Positions 5,011 to 27,800 of a stretch of DNA of 56,739 nt are shown in pieces (positions within the stretch are counted from its first letter, which is position 1; each line of letters starts with the position of its first letter). The position numbers and the translations under genes were made by a program. Source of the DNA: Macrostomum lignano (Eukaryota); the NCBI GenBank assembly GCA_002269645.1, contig NIVC01003702.1:1-56739 (forward strand), written 5' to 3'. Below the pieces are notes generated by a model that was not told the origin of the DNA, made no database searches, and saw only the letters and a list, made by a program, of their open reading frames with translations.

Positions 5011-5420
5011 CTCTTTCTCTTTTTGACCCGCAGTCATGCGCTAGATTCTCAATCTAGCCACCAAAGTAAGAAAAATTACCGACCCCTGCTATACGACATT
5101 ATTTCCAAAATTCGTTTACTTCTGCTAGAATGACTCATACCTCTGCAAAAATATATGCATAAATGTACAGTACAGTAGAAGTTACATAATCTCAACTTAC
5201 CCATAGTTATTCTCAGGCTTGAGTTTTCGAGATTTCAATATAGTTGAAAAATTCTCGTCCATAAATAGTTTGAGCTTCTGACGCCATTCTTTCGGCTGAA
5301 ATAAAAATATAATATTTAAATATATGATTATATGAAACTCGAATCGATCTGAGAGAGTTTATTGAATTTAGGCTGTCTGGCTATAGTTGATAGATGCCAG
5401 ATTTTGATTTGCGTCTAGAT

Positions 5421-6029: not shown

Positions 6030-9000
6030 TCAGGGAGAAGACGCTAGGAGAGGGGAGAACAGGAAGAGTGGAGTTGTAAATGCGGCACAGACCTTGGCAC
6101 CGACAGCGGCTTCTTTCTTAGCTTTAGCGGCGGCTGCCGCTGCGGCAGCCACAGCCGCAGCTTCCTCGTCATCCGCGACAGCGTCTTCATCGTCGCTGGC
6201 TCCGAGGAACTCGTCGTCAGCTCTGCTATGGCCAGCAGTTGGCAGCCGGCCGGCAGTTCCAGGCACCGGGGCTGGCAGAGTCTCCAAGCGGACAACATGT
6301 AAATAGCCAATAGGCTGAGTCTGTTGATGCTTCATCATCCCTGACTGCTGCTTACGCTGAGCAGACTCAAAGTCTGGCAACAATGGCAGCCTGGCGTCCA
6401 ACAGTCGCATCTGTAGAATATCCGTCAAATTGATGCAAGCAGCGCCCAATGTTTTAAAGCCGAGATTGCGATATTTTCTACGGCGCTGCAGCATCACTAG
6501 CAGCGGATTGTCGCGCTTGATAGCATGGGGATATTGGATCTCTACTAGGATCCGACGCTCCTGAGCTCTGCAGCTGTCAGCATCGTCTGTACCAGCTGAT
6601 GGAGGCTGCGGCGGTGGCGGAATCTGCTGCGAACGAAGGGTTCGTTGAGCTGGCATCTTGATAGCCAGGTAGACTGGGACAGCTGGGGACGATGAGGATG
6701 CGGGAGCTGGCTGGCCACTTGGGTGATAATCAGACAGAGTTTCACTTGGCACAGCTCCAGTTCTAGCGCATGTTGATTGACAGTTCAAGCAGAGCTGGTC
6801 AATCTCCATGTGTAATAGCCTGTGTAGGTTGATTTGAATGCTTCATTTGGAGCTAAACCTACACTTGACTTTATTGCATATTCATGACAATATTTTGATA
6901 CAACATGAATTGTAATATGTTGTAAATGAAAACCAATGCATAAAAAATGTAACCTTTATCATCTTATTTATTAAAGACTATCTGCAAGAGTTGTTAGACT
7001 AAAAGATAATCATATAAATGCACATGCAAATTTTAGATAAAATATAATAGATATTCCCTAGAATAGTATATGATATAGTAATTTTTAATAATTATTTAAG
7101 ATGTTCATAAATTCTCTATCATAGTTTAAAGATAAAATACAAACTTTTTGTTGCATATTCCTTTAACTTAAAATAACTTGAAAACCTTATAGATAAATAA
7201 AGCAAGTATTCCCCATACTCAGGATCATGTCATGTATGCCAGAAATTTCCAGTGCACATTCGAGACAGCTGGCATACACTTGGCGCACAAAGTTTTTGAA
7301 AGGGTCTTCTGGTGTACACCTTGGCATATATACAATTGGTGCACCCTGCATGGCACACACACATGGCACACATGAGGAGGCTACTGAGGCTACACCATGG
7401 CTACTGCAAAAGACAAAATCAAAGAACAAGCGTGAAATTTTGTACAAAGTTTAACAATGATTTTGCAAATATATTATAATGACAATTGACAACCATTGAT
7501 TCATTTAAAATATTCTCTAAATTGTGTTTTTTTCTTCTTTTTCTTCTTTATTTATGAAATTAAAAACATAAATCTTCAAATGTTCAATTTATAATCTTTA
7601 CTTACAATTATACAAAACGTTACAACTTACAATATATCGTGATTTTGTGTATATCGCACATTTTTTACATTAGGATTAGGACTGGCGCACCTAGCACACT
7701 TGTGCATTTTGCCTGGCATACCTGGCGCACACCAAAAATGTTTTTGGGGTGGCTTCCAGCATACACATAGCATGATCCTGACTATGGAATATTCCCAATA
7801 TAAAAATATCTATTTAATCAAAAGGCACTTTTTTATTTAAAATGAAATAAGACTCAAGCTAAAATTGTCAATATAACTTGTTATTAAAATTTAAAGGACA
7901 ATATATGATCAAATTCTTAAATCCCCTTTCCCAATATTTATAAAACACAAATAAATCATCTTATTTAAAGGCCTAAGCAATATACCTAACATCCTAACCA
8001 ATAAAATAAAGTTAAAATTAGTTAAAACTATTTTGGGTTAAAACATTTGTAATATTTTGTATAGCTAAGGACAAATAACTGGCAATTTCCTAGATTTGCA
8101 CATTTGATTATTTTTTGTTTGAAATTGCGCATTTAAATTGGCATGTAGTCTATGGTCCTCATAGTCTATAGTCTATAGAATAAAGGTCTGAGGATAATAA
8201 GAGTGAAAGCAATGGCAAAGGGAAGGGATTATTAGCTGCGAATATCGAAGCTGCGAATATCGAAACTCAAAACATGGCCAGTAGACCTCCAGTGCCTACA
8301 ACAATTGTGCTGCCTACAACTATTGGGTGCAACACTACTACAGCATTTAATACCCCTTAATACCATTTAAGAAACAAACTATTGACATTACAAAAATTTT
8401 TTTTATATTTAACTACTAGTTCTTAATTTGTTCTGTTGCCCATTTGTTTTGGCATTATGTAAATGCGCAATTTCAAATGGAAAATAATTAAATGTGTGAA
8501 TCTAGGAAATTGCCCAAATAACCAATTATATAATACAATAAATAACTTTTTTCATTTTTATTGACCTAGTATATATGAAAATAGCATTTGACAAAATAGT
8601 TACATTAAAAAATAAATCACAATATTTCTTTGCCATTAGGCTATGATGTAGAACAAAAACCAATCTGGCAATGTTGCAGTTTGTTTTGCATAATTATTTT
8701 TACTTTTGAATATGCGCCAACAAGAGTAAACAAGACAAAGTTATGTCGCGAGTCTTATCATACATTTAGTGCAAAGGGAATGTGCCATCCATCAGATTCA
8801 GTAGCTTGGCAGCAGGTACAACCCACAGTCAGGAAGGTGGTAAATTCCACGCAAAATTGCAGTGCACACAAAGGAATTTTCTGGCGCACACGGCACACAG
8901 TGAGAGCAAAAAAATTTTTTTGTGTGCTGTCTGGCACACACGGCGCACAATGAGAGCAGAAAAAATGTGTGCCATCTGGCATATATACACACATGACTCT

Positions 9001-12138: not shown

Positions 12139-13989
12139 CTAAGTCGTGCGAGCTCGCACTTGAATTAGCGGCAGTCGATGTCTTCCACCAAAATCAACGG
12201 CTTCAGAGTTTTCGCCGCGTCGGTGACCCTGCAGGCACCAGCTAGCAAGTCGCAGCAGCAGTTCCAGCAGTTCGACGATCCAGACTAGCGTAAGCCCCAG
12301 CCACATCGATAGCAACCCACCAATTTGGCTGAGCGTCGAGGCCAGAGTTCGTACTGGCTTGTCTCGCATTTGAACCACCGTGAAGTCTCGACGAGAGATC
12401 TTGAGCGTCAGAAAGCTTCGAGACACCAGACCGTGTTGCTTAACAAGCTCAGTTGCTTTAAGATTGTTGCCTGAAACAATCTGTTTTGCTACTTGGAGAT
12501 AAATTTGTTTGATTAGATTCTCTTCCATCTCAGCTTGATTGACCTTAGTTCCACCCGAATAATTGACAGCTGGTATTGTAGCGTTCCATTTCAGACCGGA
12601 TTCGCGCCACAGCTCACTCTGAAACAGATGCAGCTGCATGGACTCGCGCGGCCATCGAGCTTGAGTTGTCCAAGTGTCGAATGTCAGCGAGCTACAAGGC
12701 TGGGGACAAGCTATGCCATCATCAGTATCAAAGAGTCCCAATAGGCCGCACCGACTTCTCAGAGCGGCATGAGCCAAGCCTTCAGGCGTAAAATGGTTGA
12801 CATCGCCGTCCTGAAGGCGCTCACAGAATGCTGACGCGTTGGCCACGGAGTGAGGCAGAAATGCAAAAGTGCAACCACAGTGCCTCTCAATGTTGGCCTG
12901 TTGACGCGCTCTCTTGCACGCATCGCGGCTGTATCCGAAACTGTGACCAAGCAGACTTATGTGACTCGGAATCTCGTCTTGGCAACGTCCGTAGGGCGGT
13001 TTTAGCCTTGTCCAATTACTAGTGCTGAAACGGACTTCAGTCAGGGTGCCCGGGTAGACATTGAAACCTTCCTTGGAGATGTCGGGGAAGGTACCATTTT
13101 CGTGCAGGACCACTCGGGCCCCGGTGATCTGCGTGTTCGCGTCCATTGTGATGCAGTCGTCGCATGGCAGCCCGAGGTCGTGTCCCAAAAATAGGCGCAT
13201 CTCCATCTCAACTACGGGGTCAAGAATTTCCGAGCGCAGCGCGAACGCGTAACAGTTGAGCCGGTTCTGATCGTGCACTAGTCGCCAAAAGCCGAGCGAT
13301 TCGCAGGATGGACTGGACACGGGAGGTTCTCTCGACGGGTCCAGACTACGAACCAGCAGGTAGCAGCTGCGAATCAGATGGTCCTTAGAGAAGCCCAGGT
13401 TCGAAGGCGAATGCCCGTGCGGCAGATTGGCAAAGTAGCCATTGAGAGAAAACAGTCCAGGCAAGTAAGTTGCAACCAAACGACTTTTTTCCGACGAAAG
13501 GTTCAGGCGCTGAACACTGAATCGCGATTGCAGTACAGCGTTCCAGAACTTTCTCGGCGGTCGCCAACCGTTCTTATAGATGCGCTTCCGACCCTGAACT
13601 GACAGTGGAATCTGGTTGCACACCGTGATGGAAGGAAAGGCGGCGTCTGGACGCTCGGAGAACACAGGCATCTGGACAACGTCGTAGGCAAAGTAAAGCG
13701 AGACTATTTGGTAGAGATTCACTGAACAAGCTATTACAAGAGCGGTAACGCAGAATAGCCAAAGACAGCGTAACAGTCTTGAATCTGCTGACACAATTCT
13801 TGGTATTCCGCGAAGGCTCGTGTTCCGACAGAATCGCAAGAGAATCTCCTTGGCCTCCTCATTTTTCGTCTTCTCGTTTGTCGGGTCCAATTTAGACGTC
13901 GCTTCGTCTTCTCTGTTTTGATAGCTGACATTGGTTTTAATCTTGCTGTCGAGTTCGCTGTTAAAAGACGCTTCCGGAGCAGATGACAT
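12139..13989 (-). CDS. DEG/ENaC (amiloride-sensitive channel) family subunit, intronless, 616 aa
   Basis: FC..TSL(R)GIPRI pre-TM1, TM1, FPSITVCNQ, WTRLKPPYGRC, Cys-rich thumb (YS..AC...QQ.NI...CGC), CPQPC..ARWP, TM2 LSQIGGLLSMWLGLTLVWIVELLE. Confidence 0.95.
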   Translation of the reverse strand: MSSAPEASFNSELDSKIKTNVSYQNREDEATSKLDPTNEKTKNEEAKEILLRFCRNTSLRGIPRIVSADSRLLRCLWLFCVTALVIACSVNLYQIVSLYFAYDVVQMPVFSERPDAAFPSITVCNQIPLSVQGRKRIYKNGWRPPRKFWNAVLQSRFSVQRLNLSSEKSRLVATYLPGLFSLNGYFANLPHGHSPSNLGFSKDHLIRSCYLLVRSLDPSREPPVSSPSCESLGFWRLVHDQNRLNCYAFALRSEILDPVVEMEMRLFLGHDLGLPCDDCITMDANTQITGARVVLHENGTFPDISKEGFNVYPGTLTEVRFSTSNWTRLKPPYGRCQDEIPSHISLLGHSFGYSRDACKRARQQANIERHCGCTFAFLPHSVANASAFCERLQDGDVNHFTPEGLAHAALRSRCGLLGLFDTDDGIACPQPCSSLTFDTWTTQARWPRESMQLHLFQSELWRESGLKWNATIPAVNYSGGTKVNQAEMEENLIKQIYLQVAKQIVSGNNLKATELVKQHGLVSRSFLTLKISRRDFTVVQMRDKPVRTLASTLSQIGGLLSMWLGLTLVWIVELLELLLRLASWCLQGHRRGENSEAVDFGGRHRLPLIQVRARTT

Positions 13990-16510
13990 CGCTTTAGTTG
14001 AACACTTCAGAACTTTTAGACTTAAAATACAGACTTTTCATTTGTACTATGAGTATCGTCAAGTTTTATTGTGTAGCAGACTGTTGAGCATTTTATTCAT
14101 ACCTTCTTTTCTTTCTAGATGCGGGAACGACGGCGCGTCAATTTAAAAATCCTGCATGAGGGCTTCCAATCAGGGGAATCCCCATTGGTTCTTGAAATTT
14201 CATCTGCAGAGCTACTGCTGCATATTCTCCCCCAGCCTCCCGCATTCTACAGTCCAGTACATTTCATCCCCATCCCCTCACAAAATGCATTCAACCCATG
14301 CCAGTAAACGCTTCCTTCTCAAAGCGTTTACTTTGGCCAAAATTAATGAGTATTCAATCAAAGGCAAACAGCAGAATAGAGATTATTAATATTGCAAGCT
14401 CAGAAGTCCGACTATCTGGAGCACTGCATGCAGCATTGTCAGCCCTTCAACTCTAGGGAGAGGAGACAAGAGCATTTGTCCAAGCCAGTCTTTTGTTGGT
14501 TGTGAAACAGATAACATTAGTAGAAATTCAGGTTGTCAAGAGCATAATATAGAAACCTTGAATGAGTCTTAGAAGACTGCTAAAGAAAATTACTGATAAA
14601 ACCTGGCGACATGGACTTCTAGAAGTTATTATTTGCACAGAAATCTTGCTCCATGATCATGCGAACATATATTGTATGCAGTCCAGCCTAAGACGCGATA
14701 ACTCACTTAGCCTTGCTTGCTTAAGTCTGTCCCTCTCATAGGCACGACAATATATTTTACCACCTGAACGCATCTCATTTTCCTTTTCCCTTTTCTCCCT
14801 CGTCTCGCTTGAGTGTACTCATCAAACAAACAGACTTGATTTTGGTTTGCACTGAGGGGAACCTTCTGGCAGAAAGTCTGTTGATTTCAAAGCTGTAAAA
14901 TATTCTGAAACTAAGTTAAGCGTCACGTTGTGGTAGTAGTTGAACCTCATGGGTAAGGGGATCCCCAGATCAGTATGTTCGTAGCCTCGTACCCCAGAAA
15001 GTAGCAAAGAATTGTGTTTGAGCTTTTATGAACTATATAGACAGTTAAAACTGATAGCTGTTGAACTGCCAAGACAATGGACATTTTACCAATGCCTTGT
15101 AAGTTGATGATAAACAAATTTTCTTCTTCGCTAAAAGAGAGAGAAAGGCAGATTTTCTGACAAACCAATTGTAACAAAGTAATTATATTAAATACTTTAC
15201 AGAGAGGCAAATTTTTAGTGATTACAAAGCCTGAGAAAGAGATTCTGAGCTTATGCCTAACTTAGCTTCAAAGCAAATGCCGTCTGTCCATGGGTGACTC
15301 GAACTGCTTTGATTAAATTTGAACTACTTTAAGGTGCTTCTATGTATAATTATTAGTTGAAGATGACTCCAAACTAGTTCAATGCGACAATACTTGATGG
15401 TGACTGGCCCTTTGTGCGACTGTGCTATCGAAGTGTATCTTTAACTGTCGAGGTTGCTTCTACCAGAAGAAAATAATTTGAAGAAACCTAGCTATTATAC
15501 GTAGGTAAAACAGCATACCAGGAGAAGACAATGCAATAATCCTAAGCGAAAAAAACTCCTGTATTCCTGTGTTTTTTTGGCGCGCAGGTACTCATTTTGG
15601 AGCCCTAAAGCAAGATTATTGTTTTCTATAAAAAAGCATTGGCCTGTCCTCTCACAGCTTTTACTGAGGGGGGACACATATCCTTCCTGTTCCCCGATGG
15701 CGAAGGCCCCTGCAGTAATCTATGCATGCATTTAGAATTTCAATATTGCTATTTGAATGGCTACTGCTCCATAAAAGCAAAGCCCGAGGTCAATGGATAA
15801 AGCTCTGTCATATTCTACCTTGCATAGTCTATCGAACCCAGAGAAGCACAGCAACCCTTTAAATGCATTCCTGTGTATCCATGTTCGCATCTTATATTGT
15901 TCTGTTTACCCCTTGCCACTGTGTTGGTGGTAAACTCGTTTAAACTGCGGGTTGAGGTGGCTGGCTTGGCTGGGGTGGGTCAGTGGGATGCATGCAGGCC
16001 CAGGGTCGGTGTACTGGGGGCTGCTCAAGCGCGGGTGTTATTTATTTAGTCTTGTCTCCGCCTGTGAGTCTTTGGTTTGCTCAGATTCGCAACAATAAAT
16101 TCGTCTGCAAATTTTGGTTCGCGCAGAGGTTTGGTTTCGTGTTACCACTGTCTTGCCATTTTTTCCTTTCCCTGCGGTTTGATGATTTTCTGCTGCGAAT
16201 TTTCGTCTCTCGCGGAGATATTCGAATAGACCCTATATTTTAGAAAGCTAGCTAGACTCAGTAGCGTGCATGATGAGGGTAGAAACGCACAGTCATATTG
16301 CCGCGTGTTGAACAACAGGCCAGAGAAAATGTGCAGCAGCCTCTTTGCACAGGGTCTGTTTTCCTGCTTTTCTATAGGTCTCAGATTGTTCTTGAGAACA
16401 ATAGCTCTAGGAGTTCAAATAAAACGCCTTCTATTCAAAAGCAGGAAAAGCAGTAGTCGAACATTCCTTTTAGGCGGAGAACTTTTGCAGAGAAAAAGCC
16501 AATGTGAACA

Positions 16511-19500
16511 ATGCTGCCGATTTTGATTCTGATTGTTTTTCTGGCCGGAAGCAGTGAAGCTGCTGACACGGAGGTGAAGTCGGTGGAGTACTGCATCGTG
16601 GGCGCTGGTCCAGCCGGGCTGCAGCTGGCGTACTTCATGCAACGCGCCAAGAGGGACTACGTTGTGATCGAGAGGGCAGGCATCGCCGGCTCGTTCTTCA
16701 CGGTGTACCCGCGTCACGGCAAGCTGATTAGCATCAACAAGCGCTGGACGGACTCCTCTAACACCGAGTACACTCTGCGGCACGACTGGAACAGCCTTAT
16801 TAGCGACGATCCGAGTCTCCAGCTGCGGCACTACAGCAGCATCATGTTTCCACAAAAGGAAGTGCTCGTTAAGTACTTGAACGATTATAAAACCAAATTA
16901 GGCCTCAAAGTCGACTTCAACACCCCCGTGGCTTCCGTCGAGAAGCTCACCAGAGAGAATTTTCGCTTGAACACTACCGGTGCCAGGAACTACTCTTGCA
17001 AAGTGGTTGTTATGGCAACCGGTTTACCAAACCTACGAAAGCCAGACTTTGTGGGAGCTGAGCACACCGTCGGCTACGACAAGGTGTCCGTGAACGCGTC
17101 CGACTTTGAAGGCAAACGGGTGCTGATAATTGGTAAGGGCAACTCGGCATTCGAGACTGCTCAACACATTTACGGCAACACTCGGTTCCTGCACATGGCT
17201 GGAAGGCATGCCGTCAGGTTCGCCTGGAGCACGCACTACGTTGGAGACGTCCGAGCTGTCAACAACGAGCTGCTGGACACTTATCAGCTGAAGTCGTTGG
17301 ATGGCATGTTTGAGAGCGGTGAGTTGCGCAAATCAGCTAACTTAAGCGAGTCGTAAATGTGTTTTTGGATGCATTCCTTGAACATTTTAAGAATATGCTA
17401 TAAAGTACAGGTTTGGAGTTGCAGTCATGCGGGAGAGGCAGAAAACTCCAAGATTCCATTGCTACCTGGCATTTCAATATTTACCTAACCATCTAGAATT
17501 TGCTTAACCCTTCAGACTCTCCAGAATATAAATAAGAATTTTTAAGCCATTCCGCATCGCTAACAGTCGGTTAGGGAGAAAAAATCCTCATCGTTGAAGA
17601 GACACTTTTACTGAGGCTTGGCTATTTGCTTAGGTCACAGGTATTCTACAAAACTATGCAGTAGAATTTTATCAATCGCTTTTTTGATAAAAAACTTTGC
17701 TTATATAGCATTTTCATATCTTACACTCGTTATATCATTTATTAAATAATTTTATATTCGCAAATGGCACTCATTCAAAAGCCGGTGCGGAAATAATGCA
17801 GTAATTATTAAAGTACTCGTTGTTGCAAGTTGGCAAATCATATTCTTCTTCAGAACCTATGAGTATGAATTCTTGACAATTACAGATTCATTTTTAACTT
17901 TAAGATGTCACTTTCAAAGCACATTATTCACGTTATTCATTCCTAATATTACTATTGCCTTGACTTACCTGACAATAAGCGCCTAGCAAGGCACATCTGA
18001 ATGAAAAACTCAACAGGTTCTCTTATAGCTAGTTGATCGCCGATAAGCTTCATCGCGGGTGGTTGTTGAAAATCTATAGGCAAGCTTGCTCCAAAATCAT
18101 CCAGAATCCATAGGAATCTCCCGACGTTCAACTGGCGAGTTCTGTCTTCAACCGCCGGAGGGCAACCCTAGTGACGGTCTGGAGACCCGGATCAAGGAGC
18201 AGCAGTATTGCTACGACATTATCATTCGAGCCACCGGCTTCACCTGGGATGCTGACGTCACGGCGCCCCTGGGTCAGACGTCGACCCACCGGAAAAAGTA
18301 CCCGCGCATCTCCCACCAGTTCGAATCGTCCGATGTGCCCGGGATTTTCTACGCCGGCACGATGACGCACGGCTTGGACTTTCGCGAGGCTGCCGGCGGT
18401 TTTATTCACGGATTTCGCTACACGGCTCGAGCGTTGCATCGCTACTTGGAGAATCGTCGTCATGGAAACAAATGGCCGGGAACGCGGAGACCATTGATGG
18501 GTTTGATTGACGCGCTAGTGAAACGAATCAACGAAGGCTCTGGTACCTACCAGATGTTTTCCTTTCTCAGCGATATTGTTCTGGTGGACAAGTGAGTTTA
18601 AATGCTTTAATTATTACTATCAGTAGCGGAAGCCTCACCATAGCTTCTATGGTAGTATTGGAAAGCATGGCACCTTTTGGCTTCAATAAAGTTTCGCGCG
18701 ATTTACACCTATAGGATCGCGGTATCGCTGTAAATCCTGCGTACGACACCATTAAATCAGGTCATTTTTTCGATACCAACCTCCCTTAGCAGAATTGTGT
18801 CCGCGGGGTCTAAACAGAAATACTTTTTAGTTCTAATTTAATTGCTCGTTGGATCCTTACACTTTTGGAAAAGGATGGGAAGAGGAAAAGACAGGAGGTT
18901 CAGGAGGTTAGTTTTTTGCTCTAAATTTATCAACTTTTTTAAAACAGAGACCGAACGAGTTTCACCCTGCTAGAGGAAGTTCCATCCCGGACGCTTCACA
19001 TTCTGCCACGCATCACTGGACATCCAGTCGACGAGGGCACCGACGTGATCGTGTTCCAGTTCGAGTACGGCAAGAATTTCTCGGGCGCCAGAGCTGACAC
19101 GTTTCACGAGAGGCGTGCCGGCTGCGATATCGCTTTTGGCTACGAGTGCAACTTCTTGCACCCGGTGCTGTATCACTACAAGCGGCTGCCTAACAGTGAG
19201 CCGCTTCTCTGCTGACAGTAGTTATTGCAAAGTTCGAACCATGGGTGTATAATAGAGTGTAAAAACAGGTTCATAAGGATAAGTGGAGGAGAGAGTGAGA
19301 AAGAGCTTAGTTGAAAAGGAAAGCCTGAGAGTCTGATAACAGTCTGAGAAGGAGAGTCTAAAAAGGAGGAGAGTCTGAGAAGGACAGTCTGAGAAGGACA
19401 GTCTGAAAAGGAGGAGAGTCTGAGAAGGACAGTCTGAGAAGGACGGTCTGAGAAGGACAGTCTGAAAAGGAGAGTCTGAGAAGGACGGTCTGAGAAGGAC

Positions 19501-20397
19501 AGTCTGAAAAGGAGAGTCTGAATTGGACAGTTTAACAAAGACAGTCTGAGAAGGAGAGTCTGAAAAGAAGATCTGAGAAGGAGAGTCTGAAAAGAAGATC
19601 TGAGAAGGACAGTCTGAAAAGGAGGAGAGTCTGAGAAGGACAGTCTGAGAAGGACAGTCTGAGAAGGACAGTCTGAGAAGGACGGTCTGAGAAGGACAGT
19701 CTGAGAAGGACAGTCTGAGAAGGACAGTCTGAATTGGACAGTTTAACAAAGACAGTCTGAGAAGGAGAGTCTGAAAAGAAGATCTGAGAAGGAGAGTCTG
19801 AAAAGAAGATCTGAGAAGGACAGTCTGAAAAGGAGGAGAGTCTGAGAAGGACAGTCTGAAAAGGACAGTCTGAAAAGGAGAGTCTGAGAAGGACGGTCTG
19901 AGAAGGACAGTCTGAGAAGGACAGTCTGAGAAGGACAGTCTGAGAAGGACAGTCTGAGAAGGACCGTCTGAGAAGCAGATATTGCAAAGAATTCGTTGAA
20001 AAATGAAGAAAATTGGGGAAACTGTAAAAACCAAATAGCAGAAATAGTTGCGACATAATTTCATAATACGACCGTTCAACCGCATAAAACAGGACAGCAG
20101 ATGTTCAACGAGAGCCTGAAAACCAACAAGCTGAAGCTGCCTGAGCCTCATGCAACGCTGCATCTCATGGAGGACTTCTTCACCAACTTCCGTCAGGACA
20201 ATCACCTCGTACCTTTGGTCGCTTTCCTCGAATCCGCTCTGGGAAGGCCGCTGACGCCGCCATCTATGGAGCAGTGCCTGAGGCTGACGCTGCGTCACGG
20301 CGAAGCGCCAGAGTACTGCACCGAGGCAGCGAACAGGTGGTCCGCGGCCGAACTGATGAGCGGAGGGAGAGGCGCTACGGGCGTCTCCCGGGCTTGA
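16511..20397 (+). CDS. FOXRED2: FAD-dependent oxidoreductase domain-containing protein 2 (ERAD flavoprotein); exons 16511-17318, 18105-18591, 18948-19195, 20093-20397
   Basis: Signal peptide; IVGAGPAGLQ; YPRHGKLISINK; RHDWNSL; IIGKGNSAFE; YVGDVRAVNNELLDTYQLKSLDG; GFIHGFRYTARAL; EYGKNFSG..NFLHPVLY; HLMEDF. GT-AG phases (1, 2, 1) are consistent. Confidence 0.93.
19320..19975. repeat. 14-nt minisatellite GAGAAGGACAGTCT in FOXRED2 intron 3
   Basis: Visible, with internal higher-order duplication; source of the spurious minus ORFs 19176-20409. Confidence 0.97.
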
Positions 20398-21442
20398 TTG
20401 ATCTCGCAAGCTGCGAGCGTAATATTATTCTCCAACTTGGTTTTCATTTGAAGTTGAAAGCCAATATTAGTCTTTAAAGGCACAGACCCTATCAGAACAT
20501 AAAAGCACTTCGTTTTAATTTATGAAACTGGTGTTGGATCAATATTTACCTTCGTCTCATATTTACTTATTTTATTTAGTATTATATTGCGATACATATC
20601 ATATTTGCAAATGTGACTTAATCTCAATCATTAATTACACTCGTACCTTTCAATATAAGAAAAAATAAATCAGGATCACTCTAAAAAACATTTCTCAGAA
20701 CTGTTCTTGACTTACTGGTTGACCTGGAACTGCGCTCAAATGAAATGTATAGTTATTTTTGACAAGACACATTTTCTTTAGTATGCATAAAATATTATTT
20801 TAATCACACTGAAGGTCATAGATAGTGTTATTAAGCATCTGCGCAATAAATACAAATGGAAAAACCGCGGAATTGCCACGGTTTTTTCGGACCAACTACA
20901 TTGCTGATAAAGTGCTAGCTATCTAAAGAACGCATATAATTATGGAAGTTTTATTAGCTCCTTGTTTTAGGTAGCTAAGTGACTTCAAGAATAAAATTGG
21001 ACTTGAAACTCATCAAACTGAACTTTCGTACGTAATGTCTAAATATACTTTTACAGTACATTCAGCCTTATAAATATGCTCGGAAAAGCTGCAAGATCTT
21101 TCTCTTTTGGCTCGATTTCAATCAGTTTTTCCATCCTAAAGGATTCTGGTGCTAAAATTGGAGGATAAAATGTAAGAAATAATTGTCTTGATTGACTTGA
21201 TTTGAGTTCGTTGTACTATATTGATATTGAACCTACGTCTATTGTTGTTACAAGGACCTCTGCACAAGTTATTTCACTGGTCCTTGAGCGCTTATTGCGA
21301 AACTGTGCATTTCTGTTGCAAAGTATAACAAAGCATCAAAACTCTACAGTGCCTGGCTAAATGAGCGCTTTGAATTTACCTTTGACTTACACTTTAAGCT
21401 TTGATATGCTTTATTCAGACACTTTCTCTTCCTGCTTTTAAG

Positions 21443-23700
21443 GCCCAGAGGTAGAAAGCGTCGTCAATTAAAGTAAGTTTATTTGTTAAAAGTCAACTCT
21501 TTTTAATGGATTCAATTACAAAGCATAATTTAACTTACAGTGGTGATTCTAAGAGCCCAACAAAAGAAAGCAACACTGTAGAAGATTGTGGCGAAGAGTA
21601 AGTTCTGCTTAGCGCTTTCATTCTTGAGTAGATCGTAGTTTGAGTTCTGTAATCCCTGTGATAAAAAATATGTGCTTCAGCAATTCCAAACGAGACCCAG
21701 ACGAACTACCGTCAATTGAGCTTTACGAGCATCTGAACCAAGCTGGCATCAATGATCGAGGCGCCAGTAAACAGTGCCGAGCTGCAGACGGTCTGGAAGA
21801 TGCAACAAGACAGCTTAATTCGGATGAACGGCACTTAATCGGTTCGCTTGCTGAAGACTGGAGTTTGAGCCTCCTGACTGACCCTCAGGGAAATGGACTC
21901 GGCAAAGACAGCATCAAATGGCTGAGCTACATGATCGAGGATCAAGCTCATCTCGATGGTGATTGTCAGTGCAAGGGCAAGGCAGGACAGAGGCTACCAG
22001 TGCTAGATGGACGAGTTAAAACTTCTGGATCTATTGGTATGTGCTAAAATTTATGCAGCAAAGCCAACAATTCTTATTTAGGGACAAACACTGATATCTA
22101 AGTTAAAGAGTGAAAGTATTGAAATATTCTATTAAATAAATTTTTAGTCGATCCTGTGACGCTGAAACTTCCAAATAGTGGTTCGCGACCAAATCAGGAG
22201 ATACGCCAAGTCTACAAGTGCTGCAGCCCCCACAGGCCTGACAGAGTGCGATTGCTGCTTCCAAAAGTCCTTCCCTGTACTTCTGCTTGCACTGTTCTAG
22301 AGCTGGATACTGAATCGGGTGAATCGGGCCAACTGAAAGTGAGCTTCAAGCTGCAAGAGAAGCAGATCATGCGCAGACTGAGCACTATTCAAGGCCAGTT
22401 GTACGTGCTGCTTCTGCTCGTCTTCAAGCGTCTACTTCCAGAGGCACCAGGGAGTATCCGCAGCCTTAGGGCTTGCCACGCAAAAGCTTTGCTCTTCTTT
22501 ATGATAAGTGAGCATAGCAACGATCAAGAGAGCGCTTGGACTAAAGAGAAGCTAATCTCATTGCTGAAGGAGTCCCTTGGCCTGCTAGTAAGCTACCTTA
22601 CTGCCACCAAGACTCATGGCGATTGCATGCCGAACTTTTTCATGCCGGATGCGACACTACGTCTAAAATCTACGTCTAAAGCCGCTCGTATTGATTTTAA
22701 AAAGGAAAAACATCGCATTATTGAAAGGCTGCGTACACTCCAGAAAGATGTCTCACCGCTGCTAAATTTCGTGAAGAATCACGTCAGTGCGCGCGAATCG
22801 GACAGGGTATTCCAGTTGTTCACTGCGCTACCGATGGTGGAGCTAAATGATTTCGAAGCGTTCACTGGTGACGCCCTTCTCTATCTGCTTGTGCAACATT
22901 TGTTCAACCAGATCCCAAAGCTGCAGGTAGATGCTCGGAAGAAATTTCTTCAACACATTGAAAAGCTACGATCGCTCCCGAGCTCGTCTTCAGTCAGCAC
23001 TTGCTTGGCAATTATGGCTCGTCTCCGCCTGGATGACACAGAGAGCGCCAAAGAAAAACTGCAACAGGTCATGTGGCGACATGTGGAGCCCTGCAGATTC
23101 AACTTTCCCTGCGAAGTGGAACCAGACTTCAGCTTTCTGCCAGAGTTCACCCGGAAGCTAATAAAAATCACGCCCTACGGCAGTGGCAACATGCTGCAGG
23201 TGAATTTTCGCTCCCTGCTGATGAGTCTTCAGGCGGAGCTGCTGCCGAAAGAGCAGATATTTCTGAACGAGTGGCGCAGAGCGGTCGAGCCTGACCCAGA
23301 CATCGACGAGTTGTACGCGCTAGCTCACTACAGCAGAAATATTGAGCAAATTCGAAAATGTTCTAAGAAAATCTGGGAGCTATTAGATTGTGAGAATCGC
23401 GGTCTCGGCGATGCGCAGAAGCATTGGAGTGTCGCAAGAAAAGCGTGCTTCAATGGACTGTTCATGGTGACGATGTTAGCCGCTGCATTGGCCGCTCTAT
23501 CCAGAGTTCCCATCCTCATCAGTGATGGACCTGTCCTGGTAGGTGTAGCGGAAATTCTGATCTTCATTGTGGCTGCGTTCGCGTGTCTTCAATTATTTCT
23601 GCACACAAAGTTTGTGATCTGCCTGTTTTACAACACGCCGTCAAGATACCAATCGAATCAAAGGCTTATGCTGAGCATTTTTGCAATCTTGCCCATGTAA
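21443..23700 (+). CDS. Mab-21/cGAS-like receptor (cGLR)-type nucleotidyltransferase-fold protein with helical extension and C-terminal hydrophobic helices; exons (21443-21472, 21541-21597 putative), 21681-22036, 22148-23700; start not located
   Basis: LIGSLAE (GS..E motif), VDPV, LKVSFKLQEKQIM (WRLSF..E), LYVLLLLVFK, ACHAKALLFF (SYHLKT.LF), W..EKL, CMPNFFMPDATL (CPHYFIP..NL) occur in Mab-21 order; the 22037-22147 intron is in consistent phase 1. Confidence 0.78.
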
Positions 23701-24895
23701 GTTGCGATTCGTCATGTTTTGCATTTTAATAGTACAATTTCGATTAACAAAACAACGTTTTTTCTATCTATTGCAGTCTCTCCGTGGCTTGGTCAATTCT
23801 TTTAAATCAGCGATTCTTCCTTGACATTTCCAATATAATTGGCCAACGACTGTTGCCCGATTTGATGCGGTTTCGTCAAACGGCGGACAAGATCTTTCTG
23901 GAATTGGTTCTGGCTCTGACTTGAAACTCTTAAATGGTTGGCTCGTACTCAAGTATTTAATAATCGCACTAATTGTCTTGTAAGAGATTTTTATTCACCC
24001 AACCACACTAAGACTTTGCTTTGCAATCTTAAGAACTACGATAAAAGTACAGAAAATAAATTATTAGATTAGATTTTGGTAGGCGTAAAAAAGTAAAAGT
24101 GAGTGACCAATTAGCTATCGGATAAAAACTATCTGAAGTAGCCATTACAATGGGGAAATGGGCTCAACATCCTCTTTTAAATTTTAATGACTCAGAAATG
24201 AATGATCTTTTAGACCTTCATTGGTAGTAGCTAGTAATTGTACGAGTATATAAAGCTTTATTAATCCTGAATTTTAATATGACAGGTGCATATAGTTTGC
24301 CGTAAAGTATGCACTTTTTATGATTAGAGTACGAGTTATGATTAGAGTACTTATGATAAGTACGAGCTATAGTTAAAAGAAAGGAAAATCACAGAAATCG
24401 TTCATTTTTATTGCGCGTTTTTGGTTTAATTTCGTATCCAATGTAAAAGCTGTCAGCAGTAGAAACAATAGATTTGTTGTTTTACACTGTTATCACAGTC
24501 CTGCTTTATTTATTTAGTAAAGTTTATCAATAAAATTCACCAATGTATCATAAAATAATATTTTTAACAAAAAATTACGAGATTCTTGTTTTTCTCCTAT
24601 CAGGTTTTCAAATTCTCAACAATCTCTATATGCTTGTAAACAGATTAACGATAAACGGGACTGAAAGTATCGATATTTGAAATCGTGCCGAAAATTGCAA
24701 CTTTTTTTAATTTATCAATTACTACAGTAAAACACAAATTGTAAGGCTTAGCTATTTTCGGCGCCAATTTAAAATTCAAACAGCATATTTAGCGTTAATT
24801 ATAATAATTTCGTTAAAAAATTGTCTAGTTTCAACAAACACAACAACATGCACGTTTCAAATTAAATGAACGAGTAAAGCATATTTTCAATAACG

Positions 24896-27800
24896 TCAAT
24901 CAATGTCCGGAGCGCAGAGCAGAGCGGCGCCGCGCAGTCGCCACACGCTCTGCGGCTGCGTGGCCGGTAGGCGCACCGAGCAGACGAAGTTGGTGCTGTG
25001 GCCCGTGCTGGACAGCGCCCCGGCGCGTCTGGCGGTGCGGTAGACGGGACAGTCGTAGCTGAAGCTGGCCGAACCAACCGCTGTTGAGTCGGTAGAGTCA
25101 GCTGGGTCAGGGGTGCCGGTCTGAATTGAGAGTAAATGGCAGACGAGTGTTGATACTTTAAATCCAAATAAATAAGACAACAGAATTCAACAGATGTATA
25201 ATGCAGGAAATATGACAAAAATGAGCCATGTCGAACGTTGACAACATGACGAAAATTAAGTGTAATTTTAAGTTTTGAAAATATAACACAAATCAAGGTT
25301 ATCTAGTGTTGACAATATGACAATATGACACAAATTAAGGTTATCTAGTGATGACAATACGACAATATGACACAAATTAAGGTTATCTAGTGATGACAAT
25401 ATGACAATATGACACAAATTAAGGTTATCTAGTGATGACAATATGACAATATGACACAAATCAAGGTTATCGAACCATGATGATATGATACAAATCAAGG
25501 TTATCGAACGATGATGATATGATACAAATCAAGGTTATCCAACGATGATGATATGATACAAATCAAGGTTATCGAACGATGATGATATGATACAAATCAA
25601 GGTTATCGAACAATGATGATATGACACAAATCAAGGTTATCGAGCGATGATAATATGATACAAATCAAGGTTATTTAATGATGATGATATGACACTAATC
25701 AAGGTTATCTAATGATTATTAGACAAATTACACAAAGATATTACACAAATCAATGTTATCTAACGATGATGATATTACACAAATCAAGATTATTTAATGA
25801 TGGTATGACACAAATCAAGGTCATCTATAGCTACATCGAAGAGTTACATTACTAAGAGCTACATTGAAGAGGAGGAAAACAGCTATGCCCATTCCGTTGA
25901 TAGGATAATGATACGTACGCAGGCATAAACTCAAACAGGTTGTACAGTGACCCTGAATTTCTCATTTTCTGTTATGCACGTACACTCTTTGCGCCTTAGC
26001 CAGCCTAATCAAGGCCATGCATGGAATAAAACCCAACGACTTTAGCGCGAGATTCGGACTAACCTGACACGGCAGCATGTGCATAGCGGGCAGTTCGCAG
26101 AATCTCGAACCCGACGGACTCTCTGTGAGACCGCCGGCGCTCTCGGTCCAAGCGGCGCTGTCCAGCACCAAGCCGAACACGAACACTCCGTCGGTTGGTG
26201 TAGGAGAGCCAGACTGGAAGGCGAACTCCTCGACGCTGCCACTGCCAATCGGGGGACTGCTTGGCAGGACTCGATGACGGAACTCCAGTAGGTCGACCTT
26301 TTGTTTAACATTTAACAGATAAAACGATTAGTGAATACTGCTAACTAGGAACCTATTGTAACATAAAATACGTGTAACAACGGCACTTCTCCGTTATTTA
26401 CTCGTATAGCCATAATAGGGCCGTACTGTTTATAGCTTCTAGAACCGGTGAAGTCGCCTTGCAGGTTAACTCTAATGCTTTAGGAGAGGGTCTTTTAGCA
26501 TGGAGGTGTTTTAGCATGGAGGAGAGGGTGTTTTAGCATGGATATAGGGTGTTTTAGCATGGAGGAGGTGTTTTAGCATGGATATAGGGTGTTTTAGCAT
26601 GGAGGAGGTGTTTCAGCATGGAGGAGGTGTTTTAGCATGGAGGAGAAGGTGTTTTAGCATGGAGGAGAAGGTGTTTTAGCGTGGAGGAGAAGGTGTTTTA
26701 GCAAGGATATAGGGTGTTTTAGCATGGAGTTGTTGTAGCATGGAGGTGTTTTAGCATGGAGGAGAAGGTGTTTTAGTATGGAGGAGGTGTTTTAGCATGG
26801 ATATAGGGTGTTTTAGCATGGAGGAGGTGTTTCAGCATGGAGGAGGTGTTTTAGCATGGAGGAGAAGGTGTTTTAGCATGGAGGAGAAGGTGTTTTAGCA
26901 TGGAGGAGGTGTTTTAGCATGGATATAGGGTGTTTTAGCATGGAGGAGGTGTTTTAGCATGGATATAGGGTGTTTTAGCATGGAGGGGGTGTTTCAGCAT
27001 GGAGGAGGTGTTTTAGCATGGAGGAAAAGGTGTTTTAGCATGGAGGAGAAGGTGTTTTAGCATGGAGGAGAAGGTGTTTTAGCATGGAGGAGAAGGTGTT
27101 TTAGCATGGAGGAGAAGGTGTTTTAGCATGGATATAGGGTGTTTTAGCATGGAGGTGTTTTAGCATGGAGGTGTTTTAGCATGGAGGAGAAGGTGTTTTA
27201 GTATGGAGGAGGTGTTTTAGCATGGATATAGGGTGTTTTAGCATGGAGGAGGTGTTTCAGCATGGAGGAGGTGTTTTAGCATGGAGGAGAAGGTGTTTTA
27301 GCATGGAGGAGAAGGTGTTTTAGCGTGGAGGAGAAGGTGGTAGCATGGAGAAGGTGTTTAGCATGGAGGAGAGGGTGGTAGCATGGAGAAGGTGTTTAGC
27401 ATGGAGGAGAGGGTGGTAGCATGGAGTCAATCGGTGATGGCATGCGGTCACTCAGAATAAGCTGGCTCACTGGCACGCGAAGCCTCCTGGCCTGCGCCTG
27501 AAGCACGGCGGTGAGAAATCCTTGCGGAAAAAAGAAGGCCGGCAGCCAATGCGCGAACGGTTCCGGTCCGTGAGGAAACATATCCGGCTCCTTGAGCAGG
27601 CCGCTGCGCTGCTGGAAGTCGCGCACGAGTCGTTCGGCCCAGCCGGCAAGGAATCGAACCCGGGTGCGCAGATCGGCAGCCCAGGCGCTGAGGGATTTGC
27701 AGGACTCGTAACGCAGCCAGGCGGGCGGCACCCGGTTGCGCAGGAAAGCGGACAGGGCCGACTCTAGCGAGTCCGTCATCAGGGTGTCGCCGCGCAGAGC

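What the first reader, a model, noticed from the sequence alone, without database searches (positions are those of the whole stretch)
21681..23700. Membrane-tailed, probably pseudo-catalytic cGAS-like receptor (Mab-21 fold)
Seen: the spliced product has Mab-21 landmarks in order (GSLAE; VDPV; LKVSF.LQEK; ACHAK.LLF; W..EKL; CMPNFFMP..TL). It continues through about 250 aa of helical sequence and ends in two hydrophobic stretches (GLFMVTMLAAALAALSRVPILI; PVLVGVAEILIFIVAAFACLQLFL). Known: cGAS/cGLR/CD-NTase enzymes need hG[GS]...Dh[DE]h plus a third Asp. Here the expected DxD position reads GKDSIKWL (21901-21924) and lacks a DxD pair, while the GS and third Asp survive; the conserved SYH is altered to ACH. 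Inference: a membrane-anchored pseudoenzyme, for example a nucleotide second-messenger or nucleic-acid sensor fused to a 2TM effector-like module. This would loosely parallel bacterial CBASS 2TM effectors but in one animal protein. I do not know a described cGLR with this architecture. It is the best candidate for an undescribed system in the window.
Basis: partly seen in the sequence, partly recalled or inferred. Interest (0 to 1): 0.78.

Follow-up and report, generated by a model that had tools for sequence, protein, structure and literature searches.

The report
Membrane-anchored inactive cGAS-like flatworm protein
This flatworm (Macrostomum lignano) gene encodes a relative of the innate-immune enzyme cGAS that has lost the residues needed to make a signalling nucleotide and carries a three-helix membrane anchor; it is an unusual offshoot of a large cGAS-like gene family in this worm, and its function has not been tested.

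Summary
The gene is real. The product is identical to annotated PAA50173.1 (713 aa, Macrostomum lignano).

It is a Mab-21/cGLR-fold protein. HHalign against reference cGLRs gives 98.8% probability; the top Foldseek hits are Sp-cGLR1 and MiD51.

The active site is degenerate. GS is kept, both metal-binding acids are replaced (S107, K109), and the base-stacking Tyr is Cys258.

The tail has three predicted TM helices plus an amphipathic helix. Part of it lies in a last exon beyond 23700.

The protein sits inside a large cGLR-like family: 74 clusters (50% identity) at E<1e-30, and all 30 clusters looked up are M. lignano. Most members have ankyrin repeats and an intact catalytic triad. Li et al. 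2023 cloned five. Among 155 representatives, only this locus and a ~93% identical second locus carry the TM tail.

Best reading: a membrane-tethered, non-catalytic sensor or scaffold, as MiD49/51 are. A direct sensor-pore role is possible but untested. I rate it a new variant of a known kind, of moderate interest.

The parts
21170..21171 (+). Coding exon 1: first two bases (AT) of a start codon split by an intron (AT|gtaaga ... ttttaag|G)
   Evidence: The annotated gene range starts at 21170. The six-exon splice reproduces P0001 exactly.
21443..21472 (+). Coding exon 2: encodes the basic N-terminal patch PRGRKRRQL. The region is disordered in the model.
   Evidence: pLDDT is below 50 for residues 1-23.
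21541..21597 (+). Coding exon 3 (GDSKSPTKESNTVEDCGE)
   Evidence: GT-AG borders.
21681..22036 (+). Coding exon 4: N-terminal helices and first strands of the NTase core (residues 30-149)
21841..21846 (+). G84-S85, the conserved NTase GS motif (retained)
   Evidence: Aligned with the GS of reference cGLRs. Near-invariant in the family.
21910..21918 (+). S107-I108-K109, in place of the family's D-I-D metal-binding pair (both acids lost)
   Evidence: hmmalign census, MAFFT, HHalign to reference cGLRs. The motif sits at the start of strand 108-119 in the model.
22148..23696 (+). Coding exon 5, a single 1549-nt exon. It encodes the rest of the Mab-21 domain, the ~245-aa family-specific helical domain, TM1, TM2 and the first half of TM3.
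   Evidence: Continuous ORF. Splice model.
22150..22152 (+). D150 of 'VDPV'.
   Evidence: HHalign aligns SIVDPvTLKL with the strand preceding SVDLV in reference cGLRs. In paralogs this column is Q/N/S-P.
22198..22200 (+). E166 (RPNQE): the position of the third catalytic acid, with a conservative D-to-E change
   Evidence: Lies on strand 165-173. 56 residues after K109.
22474..22476 (+). C258, in place of the near-invariant Tyr (family K-T/S-Y-H-A-K; cGAS S-Y-H, human Tyr436)
   Evidence: The role of Tyr436 is taken from PMC6529454.
22663..23397 (+). Family-specific alpha/beta 'helical' domain (residues ~321-565), shared with the ankyrin-bearing paralogs
   Evidence: Conserved across the family. 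Confident model, pLDDT 83. No significant PDB fold match.
23455..23520 (+). Predicted TM1 (residues 585-606, GLFMVTMLAAALAALSRVPILI)
   Evidence: KD 19-mer 1.99. Hessa sum +0.49, borderline. Helix 570-601 in the model.
23530..23631 (+). Predicted TM2 (residues 610-643, PVLVGVAEILIFIVAAFACLQLFLHTKFVICLFY)
   Evidence: KD 2.79. Hessa sum -1.6. Helix 610-642.
23665..23696 (+). Predicted TM3, first half (residues 655-665)
   Evidence: KD 2.35, Hessa sum -0.61.
23777..23924 (+). It encodes the second half of TM3 (to residue 675, 23807), the amphipathic C-terminal helix (691-712, 23853-23918) and the stop codon TGA (23922-23924).
23475..23476 (+). Candidate alternative 5' splice site (ACGAT|GTTAGC). 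Joined to the exon-6 acceptor, it would remove residues 591-664 in frame.
   Evidence: The junction GLFMVT|ILSVAWS appears in models P0003 and P0025 of the second locus. No transcript evidence was examined.

Best explanation
The locus encodes a 713-aa integral membrane protein. Its cytosolic N-terminal part is a cGAS-like (Mab-21/cGLR) nucleotidyltransferase fold followed by a ~245-aa domain specific to this flatworm family. Its C-terminus is three transmembrane helices plus an amphipathic helix.

Shown:
- The fold and the family membership.
- Both metal-binding aspartates (to S107 and K109) and the base-stacking tyrosine (to C258) are replaced, while GS and a Glu at the third acid position remain.
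- The tail shares an exon with the catalytic-fold domain, has coding-like composition, and is identical where covered in a second, ~93% identical locus.
- The protein is nested in a clade of ankyrin-bearing paralogs with intact catalytic triads.

Inferred:
- It cannot synthesise a nucleotide second messenger.
- It works as a membrane-tethered pseudoenzyme. It would keep the ligand- or partner-binding surfaces of the cGLR and helical domains, place them on a membrane facing the cytosol, and act as a scaffold, decoy or local sensor for the signalling of its catalytic paralogs. MiD49/MiD51 use a dead Mab-21 fold on a membrane in a comparable way to recruit a partner.
- It arose from an ankyrin-cGLR ancestor by loss of the ankyrin repeats and of catalysis, and gain of the tail.
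For: Gene model: the six-exon splice equals PAA50173.1 and the annotated range.

Fold and family:
- HHalign of the family profile against reference cGLRs gives 98.8%, E 5e-17, over 282 columns.
- Foldseek top hits are Sp-cGLR1 (6e-5), MiD51 (4e-4), MiD49 and bacterial CdnE, from a model with pLDDT 80.8 and pTM 0.78.
- The family profile hits only cGLR1, cGAS and Mab21L1 among PDB sequences.
- PF20266 is hit by 15 of 15 family members tested.

Active site: S-I-K replaces D-I-D, and 74 of 96 aligned family domains keep the full triad. C258 replaces the near-invariant Tyr.

Membrane tail:
- KD peaks of 1.99, 2.79 and 2.35; Hessa sums of +0.5, -1.6 and -0.6, against a minimum of +5.7 in residues 1-560.
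- Lys/Arg are enriched before TM1 and in loop 2, and there is no N-terminal hydrophobic segment.
- GC3 is 0.54 in the tail and 0.51-0.57 in the rest of the CDS, against GC of 0.24-0.37 in introns.
- Compared with the second locus there are 0 differences in 102 tail positions and 36 in 510 elsewhere. At the 7.1% rate about 7 would be expected, so P is about 6e-4.

Phylogeny: a long branch inside the 'DIDW' clade of ankyrin-bearing paralogs. No ankyrin exons lie upstream.

Precedent: MiD51 is a TM-anchored Mab-21-fold protein without catalytic residues (PMC3926961).
Against: - There are no expression, localisation or binding data.
- TM prediction rests on hydropathy scales and a low-confidence part of the model (pLDDT 45-70).
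- TM1 is borderline on the Hessa scale.
- No partner or ligand is known for any member of this family. The five M. lignano cGLRs cloned by Li et al. are not mentioned in their main text.
- The MiD analogy is by architecture only: the TM is at the opposite end and there is no orthology.
- The conserved tail could reflect gene conversion rather than selection.
- Models of the second locus splice out most of the TM region.
Confidence: 0.55

Rival explanations
1. One-protein sensor-effector. The dead cGLR domain senses a ligand (nucleic acid or other). Ligand-driven oligomerisation makes the TM tail disrupt or permeabilise the membrane it sits in. This would bypass a second messenger and parallel CBASS CD-NTase plus TM effector pairs.
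For: - In the same family, the three clusters fused to a caspase domain (P0013, P0162, P0014) have also lost the second acid (D-M-N or D-I-N) and the third acid. In those clusters and in this locus, a directly attached effector-like module coincides with loss of catalysis.
- The TM helices contain buried polar or charged residues (R601, E617) and a small-residue face (AAALAAL).
Against: - The tail shows no similarity to any known pore-forming or CBASS effector module.
- Other pseudo-catalytic family members (P0017, P0091, the P0135 group) have no recognised effector, although P0091 and the P0135 group were not domain-scanned.
- The correlation rests on very few lineages.
- Three TM helices with short loops are equally typical of a plain anchor.
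Confidence: 0.17
2. Membrane receptor for the nucleotide signals made by the catalytic paralogs. The dead active-site pocket would bind the product and the TM part would relay it, in a STING-like role.
For: - GS and one acid are retained.
- MiD51 shows that a dead Mab-21 pocket can still bind ADP or GDP (PMC3926961).
- cGAS and STING were reported lost in the parasitic flatworm S. mansoni (PMC4117786). The receptor for the many M. lignano cGLR-like enzymes is therefore unknown.
Against: - The Tyr that stacks on the base in cGAS is Cys here, and both metal ligands are gone. The canonical nucleotide pocket is therefore badly damaged.
- Whether M. lignano has STING could not be checked with the tools left.
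- No nucleotide product is known for any member of this family.
Confidence: 0.08
3. A non-functional or decaying paralog. In a fast-expanding family, one copy lost its catalytic residues and read through into formerly non-coding, T-rich sequence that happens to be hydrophobic. The tail would have no function.
For: - P0001 sits on a long branch.
- The active site is degenerate.
- The tail has no homologs outside this locus pair.
- No expression evidence was examined.
Against: - The ORF is intact over six exons with canonical splice sites.
- Where the partial models of the second locus cover the protein, they keep the same substitutions at S107, K109, E166 and C258, and an identical tail: 0 differences in 102 positions against 7.1% elsewhere.
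- GC3 of the tail matches the rest of the CDS.
- The fold core is predicted with high confidence.
Confidence: 0.12
4. Still an active nucleotidyltransferase that uses non-canonical residues, for example D106 and E166.
For: An Asp (D106) directly precedes the lost pair, and GS and E166 are present.
Against: - D106 is at position i-1 on a beta strand and should point away from the pocket.
- A Lys occupies the second metal-ligand position.
- The base-stacking Tyr is lost.
- D106 aligns with the near-invariant family Ser, not with an acid.
Confidence: 0.03

Closest known systems
Macrostomum lignano ankyrin-cGLR paralogs (e.g. PAA62074.1 = P0004; PAA93208.1 and PAA68676.1, cloned as #92-93 in Li et al. 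2023, PMC9980059)
   Same: They share the Mab-21 core and the ~245-aa helical domain, at 33-38% identity over ~550 residues. They come from the same species-specific family.
   Different: The paralogs have N-terminal ankyrin repeats, an intact GS / D-I-D / PAxD triad and Tyr, a charged C-terminus and no TM. This protein has no ankyrin repeats, S-I-K / E / Cys, and a 3TM tail.
cGAS and animal cGLRs (Sp-cGLR1, PDB 8gjy; cGAS)
   Same: Same bilobed NTase/Mab-21 fold and the same order of motifs (GS, acid strand, third-acid strand, RxSFS..E, SYH.K, W, P.FF).
   Different: The [DE]h[DE]h pair and the Tyr are lost. There is no zinc thumb. Extra helical domain and membrane tail. No enzymatic role is expected.
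MiD49 / MiD51 (MIEF2 / MIEF1)
   Same: Mab-21-fold proteins without catalytic residues, anchored in a membrane and facing the cytosol, that act as adaptors. They rank second to fourth in Foldseek (PMC3926961).
   Different: MiD proteins have a single N-terminal TM anchor followed by a disordered linker. Here there are three C-terminal TM helices. There is no orthology, because P0001 nests in a flatworm-specific cGLR clade. There is no sign of the Drp1-recruitment loop.
[quoted passage not shown]
   Same: Mab-21 family members, at least one of them (ITPRIPL1) membrane-inserted. Kuchta et al. note that only some Mab-21 members keep catalytic residues.
   Different: Different topology (single-pass for ITPRIPL1). 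There is no specific sequence relationship. None of them appeared among the PDB or profile hits here.
Bacterial CBASS: CD-NTase plus transmembrane effectors
   Same: Same NTase superfamily (CdnE and CdnG appear among the Foldseek hits). The idea of coupling this sensor fold to a membrane-acting module is shared.
   Different: In CBASS the cyclase is active and the TM effector is a separate protein with its own nucleotide-binding domain. Here there is one polypeptide, a dead cyclase fold, and no PADLOC match.
Caspase-fused members of the same family (P0013 = PAA59752.1, P0162 = PAA80948.1, P0014 = PAA93319.1)
   Same: Same core and helical domain. They also lack the complete triad (D-M-N or D-I-N, third acid lost) and are also fused to a non-ankyrin C-terminal module.
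   Different: Their C-terminal module is ankyrin repeats plus Peptidase_C14, not a membrane tail.

Membership tests
Mab-21 / cGLR superfamily (homology and fold) | Significant profile-profile similarity to bona fide cGLRs across both lobes | tested here: met
   HHalign of family alignment A5 against seven cGLRs taken from Li et al. Table S3 (A8): probability 98.8%, E 5.3e-17, 282 columns, P0001 residues 37-331.
Mab-21 / cGLR superfamily (homology and fold) | Predicted structure matches solved cGLR, cGAS or MiD structures best | tested here: met
   Foldseek against PDB: 8gjy Sp-cGLR1 E 6e-5, MiD51 4e-4, MiD49 0.016, then CdnE and CdnG. TM-score normalised to the target is 0.45-0.50. Model pLDDT is 80.8.
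Mab-21 / cGLR superfamily (homology and fold) | Pfam PF20266 (Mab-21_C) above its gathering score | tested here: inconclusive
   P0001 scores 19.7 bits against a cut-off of 24.1, E 9e-4. All 15 family members scanned hit PF20266 at E<=0.01, best 2.7e-7.
Mab-21 / cGLR superfamily (homology and fold) | Pfam PF03281 (Mab-21 NTase domain) match | tested here: not met
   No hit at E<=10 for P0001, and none at E<=0.01 for 15 family members. The N-lobe is recognised only by profile-profile and fold comparison.
Catalytically competent cGLR (motif of Li et al. 2023: h[QT]GS X8-20 [DE]h[DE]h X50-90 h[DE]h) | h[QT]GS | tested here: inconclusive
   P0001 reads L-I-G-S. GS is present and aligned, but Ile replaces Q/T. 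Close paralogs read M-T-G-S.
Catalytically competent cGLR (motif of Li et al. 2023: h[QT]GS X8-20 [DE]h[DE]h X50-90 h[DE]h) | [DE]h[DE]h metal-binding pair | tested here: not met
   S107-I108-K109-W110 in three independent alignments. The second locus has the same residues.
Catalytically competent cGLR (motif of Li et al. 2023: h[QT]GS X8-20 [DE]h[DE]h X50-90 h[DE]h) | Third acid, h[DE]h, 50-90 residues later | tested here: met
E166 (Q-E-I) lies 56 residues after K109 and aligns with the Asp of SVDLV in reference cGLRs.
Catalytically competent cGLR (motif of Li et al. 2023: h[QT]GS X8-20 [DE]h[DE]h X50-90 h[DE]h) | Synthesis of a nucleotide second messenger | not testable with these tools
   Needs a biochemical assay.
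MiD49/MiD51-type membrane-anchored Mab-21 adaptor | Loss of catalytic residues in a Mab-21 fold | tested here: met
   The feature is described for MiD51 in PMC3926961.
MiD49/MiD51-type membrane-anchored Mab-21 adaptor | Single N-terminal TM anchor followed by a disordered region | tested here: not met
   No hydrophobic segment in residues 1-560 (maximum KD 1.27, minimum Hessa sum +5.7). All TM segments lie at 585-675.
MiD49/MiD51-type membrane-anchored Mab-21 adaptor | Orthology or specific sequence relationship to MiD proteins | tested here: not met
   Sequence-profile hits in the PDB are cGLR1, cGAS and Mab21L1 only. P0001 nests in an M. lignano-specific clade.
CBASS-type transmembrane effector | Match to a known CBASS effector or other defence-system model | tested here: not met
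   PADLOC: 0 families at E<=1.
Integral membrane protein | Hydrophobic helices of TM length with favourable insertion energy | tested here: met
   Three segments with KD 1.99, 2.79 and 2.35 and Hessa sums of +0.49, -1.6 and -0.61. The model gives helices 570-601, 610-642 and 650-686. A dedicated predictor (DeepTMHMM) was not available.

The most novel reading that the evidence does not exclude
In this flatworm, cGLR-derived sensors may have been rewired to act without a second messenger, by direct fusion to executioner modules. One lineage is fused to a caspase and this lineage to a membrane-inserting tail. On that reading PAA50173.1 would be a single-chain 'sense and perforate' (or 'sense and signal at the membrane') immune protein. 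That would be an animal counterpart of the CBASS cyclase plus TM-effector logic, collapsed into one polypeptide.
Probability: 0.15. Interest if true: 0.8.

Novelty: new variant of a known kind. Interest (0 to 1): 0.5.

Why it matters
cGLRs are now seen as a major family of animal pattern-recognition receptors. Flatworms are usually cited as having lost the pathway (PMC4117786; PMC9980059 says 'most platyhelminthes').

This window shows one member of a very large M. lignano cGLR-like family: at least 74 clusters at 50% identity with E<1e-30, and all 30 clusters looked up are from this species. Surveys that select on an intact catalytic motif would exclude this member. It is catalytically dead, lacks the usual ankyrin repeats and is built into a membrane.

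If the protein is functional, it gives a tractable case of how a nucleotide-signalling sensor is turned into a pseudoenzyme with a new output. M. lignano supports transgenesis, which would help. Together with the caspase-fused paralogs, it suggests that domain shuffling around a cGLR core may be a general way of building immune-like receptors in this lineage.

If it is not functional, it is simply a decaying paralog in a fast-evolving family.

Tried and rejected
1. phmmer of the protein against PDB sequences gave nothing meaningful.
2. The search for homologous proteins with a 15-sequence family profile returned only the self cluster and its fragments. With the TM tail alone it returned nothing, not even the protein itself. 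Both are uninformative and are not evidence of absence.
3. I looked for other family members with C-terminal TM segments. Only P0041 and P0056 showed strong hydrophobic segments downstream of the core. P0056 is an old gene model fused to a neighbouring Delta/EGF gene, so I rejected it. P0041 (3379 aa) shows only ankyrin domains; I did not examine its segments at 2653-2778 and 3352-3371 further, and the model may be a merge. P0057, which has no such segments, is a model fused to a homeodomain gene.
4. I looked for ankyrin-coding exons upstream (18500-21700, + strand). There are none, only a minisatellite.
5. I folded the helical domain alone and searched the PDB. There is no significant match (best E 0.12, generic TPR-like hairpins).
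6. PADLOC gave no hit for this protein.
7. Literature searches for Macrostomum with cGLR, cGAS or STING found no paper. PAA50173 and the caspase-fused accessions are not in the held text of Li et al.'s supplements, but several of those files were cut when stored.
8. I considered that the tail might be a gene-model chimera. I rejected this because TM1 and TM2 lie in the same exon and ORF as the Mab-21 C-lobe.
9. I considered D106 or D150 as substitute catalytic residues. I rejected both on alignment and strand register.
10. The model's coordinates could not be read, so the active-site geometry was not measured.
Full report
**What is there.** The window is contig NIVC01003702.1 of the Macrostomum lignano assembly GCA_002269645.1. 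The finding sits on a + strand gene of six coding exons: 21170-71, 21443-72, 21541-97, 21681-22036, 22148-23696 and 23777-23924. All introns are GT-AG. Introns have GC of 0.24-0.37, against 0.43-0.51 in the coding segments. The spliced translation is identical to the deposited protein PAA50173.1 / A0A267DLJ4 (BOX15_Mlig002844g1, 713 aa). The start codon is split by the first intron (AT|gtaaga...ttttaag|G). The neighbours are unrelated genes: an ASC/ENaC channel on the - strand, a pyridine-nucleotide oxidoreductase upstream, and a dynein heavy chain downstream on the - strand.

**Checking the observation.** All quoted landmarks are present, in order and in frame, and GKDSIKWL is at 21901-21924. 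Pfam on the single sequence gives only a sub-threshold Mab-21_C hit (19.7 bits against 24.1), so stronger tests were needed.
- A profile of the core region found 233 proteins at E<1e-3 among 1.84 billion cluster representatives, 74 of them at E<1e-30.
- The family profile hits only cGLR1, cGAS and Mab21L1 among PDB sequences.
- HHalign of the family against seven cGLRs taken from Li et al.'s screening table gives 98.8% probability, E 5e-17, over 282 columns.
- An AlphaFold2 model built on a 51-sequence alignment (pLDDT 80.8, pTM 0.78; residues 30-565 mostly above 85) finds Sp-cGLR1, MiD51, MiD49 and bacterial CdnE/CdnG as its best PDB matches.

The Mab-21/cGLR assignment is therefore sound.

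**The active site.** Three independent alignments (MAFFT, hmmalign, HHalign) agree.
- G84-S85 is the GS motif.
- The family's D-I-D pair reads S107-I108-K109.
- The third acid (the family's PAxD, the reference cGLRs' SVDLV) is E166 in RPNQE.
- The family's near-invariant Tyr (K-T/S-Y-H-A-K) aligns with the cGAS SYH Tyr. Human Tyr436 sandwiches the base of cGAMP and of inhibitors (PMC6529454). Here it is Cys258.

Of 96 aligned family domains, 74 keep GS, both acids and the third acid. With two metal ligands and the stacking Tyr gone, and a Lys in a metal-ligand position, catalysis is very unlikely. The second locus has the same four residues, so the loss predates the split of the two copies.

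**The tail.** Hydropathy gives three segments: 585-606, 610-643 and 655-675. Their KD 19-mer peaks are 1.99, 2.79 and 2.35, and their Hessa sums are +0.49, -1.6 and -0.61. Nothing in residues 1-560 is better than KD 1.27 or Hessa +5.7. The model gives long helices at 570-601, 610-642 and 650-686, plus an amphipathic helix at 691-712, all at low confidence. Lys/Arg cluster before TM1 and in the TM2-TM3 loop, and there is no N-terminal signal-like segment. The cGLR part should therefore face the cytosol.

TM1, TM2 and half of TM3 are in the same 1549-nt exon as the Mab-21 C-lobe, so the architecture is not a merged gene model. GC3 of the tail (0.54) matches the rest of the CDS. Three partial models (P0002, P0003, P0025) share one set of substitutions and so represent a second locus. 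Against it, P0001 differs at 36 of 510 positions in residues 31-558, but at 0 of 102 covered tail positions; about 7 would be expected (P about 6e-4). This suggests constraint, although gene conversion is not excluded.

**Context: a lineage-specific family.** All 30 clusters whose members I looked up are from M. lignano; two weak hits on the Mab-21_C region only, from unnamed ENA records, are not counted. The usual architecture is N-terminal ankyrin repeats, the Mab-21 core and a ~245-aa helical domain. That helical domain folds confidently but has no significant PDB match.

Li et al. 2023 state that most platyhelminths have no cGLRs beyond Mab21-like proteins. They nevertheless cloned five M. 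lignano proteins for their screen, two of them from the subfamily closest to this gene (PMC9980059). None is discussed in their main text. Their selection required an intact catalytic motif, so this protein would have been excluded.

In a neighbour-joining tree, P0001 is a long branch inside the 'DIDW' clade of ankyrin-bearing, triad-intact paralogs. No ankyrin exons lie upstream. Among 155 representatives, a C-terminal multi-TM tail is confirmed only for this locus pair. Of the two other candidates, P0056 is a chimeric old model; P0041 was not resolved.

**How it most likely works.**
- Shown: the fold, the dead active site, the membrane tail, the cytosolic orientation by charge bias, and the derivation from catalytic ankyrin-bearing relatives.
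- Inferred: it acts as a membrane-tethered pseudoenzyme, that is, a scaffold, decoy or local sensor that uses the binding surfaces of the cGLR and helical domains. MiD49/51 use a dead Mab-21 fold on the mitochondrial outer membrane in a comparable way (PMC3926961). Confidence is 0.55.

The main rival is a direct sensor-effector in which the tail damages or signals through the membrane (0.17). It draws some support from the caspase-fused members of the family (P0013, P0162, P0014), which have also lost catalytic residues. A receptor for the paralogs' nucleotide products (0.08) is weakened by the loss of the base-stacking Tyr. A decaying paralog (0.12) is weakened by the intact six-exon ORF, the conserved tail and the coding-like composition. 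Residual enzymatic activity is unlikely (0.03).

**Comparison with the known, and novelty.** Membrane-inserted Mab-21 family proteins are not new. MiD49/51 have an N-terminal anchor and lack catalytic residues. ITPRIPL1 is a single-pass membrane protein. Kuchta et al. list 12 human Mab-21 proteins, including ITPRIP, ITPRIPL1, ITPRIPL2 and TMEM102, and note that only some keep catalytic residues (PMC2794190, PMC11357910). Ankyrin- and death-domain-fused cGLRs are known in corals.

Three things appear undescribed: a member of the cGLR clade proper with a C-terminal three-helix membrane tail, its pairing with loss of catalysis, and the parallel caspase fusions. I therefore rate it a new variant of a known kind. 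It is of moderate interest (0.5). Everything functional remains inference, and a hint of an isoform that removes most of the TM region (alternative donor at 23474|23475, seen in models of the second locus) needs transcript data.

Noticed in passing
Related proteins P0013 (PAA59752.1), P0162 (PAA80948.1), P0014 (PAA93319.1); not in the window: Three M. lignano paralog clusters fuse the same Mab-21 and helical core to C-terminal ankyrin repeats and a caspase (Peptidase_C14) domain with SHG and Q[AS]CR motifs. Their NTase sites read D-M-N or D-I-N, with the third acid lost. Direct fusion to an effector may therefore go with loss of cGLR catalysis.
   Followed up: partly
Family level (P0004-P0197): The cGLR-like family is very large: 74 clusters at 50% identity with E<1e-30. 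All 30 clusters looked up are from M. lignano. This contrasts with the usual statement that flatworms lost cGAS and cGLRs. Whether M. lignano has STING could not be checked.
   Followed up: partly
window 21170-21171 and 21443: The annotated start codon is split by a 271-nt intron (AT|gtaaga ... ttttaag|G). This is unusual. The true 5' end was not verified against transcripts, and I did not test whether a trans-spliced leader supplies the start.
   Followed up: no
window 23475-23696 (alternative donor ACGAT|GTTAGC at 23474|23475): Gene models of the second locus (P0003, P0025) join GLFMVT directly to ILSVAWS. In the window this corresponds to an in-frame 222-nt internal intron that would remove residues 591-664 (most of TM1, TM2 and half of TM3). 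The same models skip other internal parts of the long exon, so they may be artefacts.
   Followed up: partly
window 21443-21472 (residues 2-11): The N-terminus carries a basic patch, PRGRKRRQL, in a disordered region. It resembles a nuclear localisation signal or a nucleic-acid- or lipid-binding patch. Combined with a membrane tail, this raises the question of which membrane is targeted.
   Followed up: no
P0003 (A0A1I8J5N8) and P0025 (A0A1I8FS91): UniRef names these fragments 'GB1/RHD3-type G domain-containing protein' and 'Acyl-CoA desaturase'. Their sequences contain neither domain. The names look like annotation errors.
   Followed up: no
P0016 (A0A1I8GXZ3), not in the window: One family member carries two complete Mab-21 plus helical cores in tandem (residues 22-586 and 769-1324), reminiscent of OAS2/OAS3. 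Because it is an old gene model, it could be a merge of two neighbouring genes.
   Followed up: no
window 12139-13989, - strand: A single-exon 616-aa ORF is an amiloride-sensitive sodium channel (ASC/ENaC/degenerin) homolog (PF00858, E 3e-53).
   Followed up: yes
window 6030-6809, - strand: An exon-sized ORF matches the N-terminal C2 domain of PACS (phosphofurin acidic cluster sorting protein), E 9e-15.
   Followed up: partly
window about 16500-20400 (+) and about 24900-56739 (-): Upstream on the + strand is a 615-aa Pyr_redox_2/3 oxidoreductase gene. Its called range ends near 20397, and its long ORFs are at 16511-17356 and 18086-18595. Downstream on the - strand is a dynein heavy chain gene (AAA_7, AAA_8, MT, AAA_9 and DYN_lid hits) that fills the rest of the window.
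   Followed up: partly
window 19339-19979 and 25276-25827; also 97-985, 4102-5133, 42512-42976, 49621-49968, 50285-50826 and 53569-54504: There are minisatellites: a 14-nt unit in a 211-nt higher-order repeat at 19339-19979, and 31-42-nt units at 25276-25827. Several low-complexity tracts produce long spurious ORFs in all frames, for example the MPHPQ repeats at 53569-54504.
   Followed up: partly
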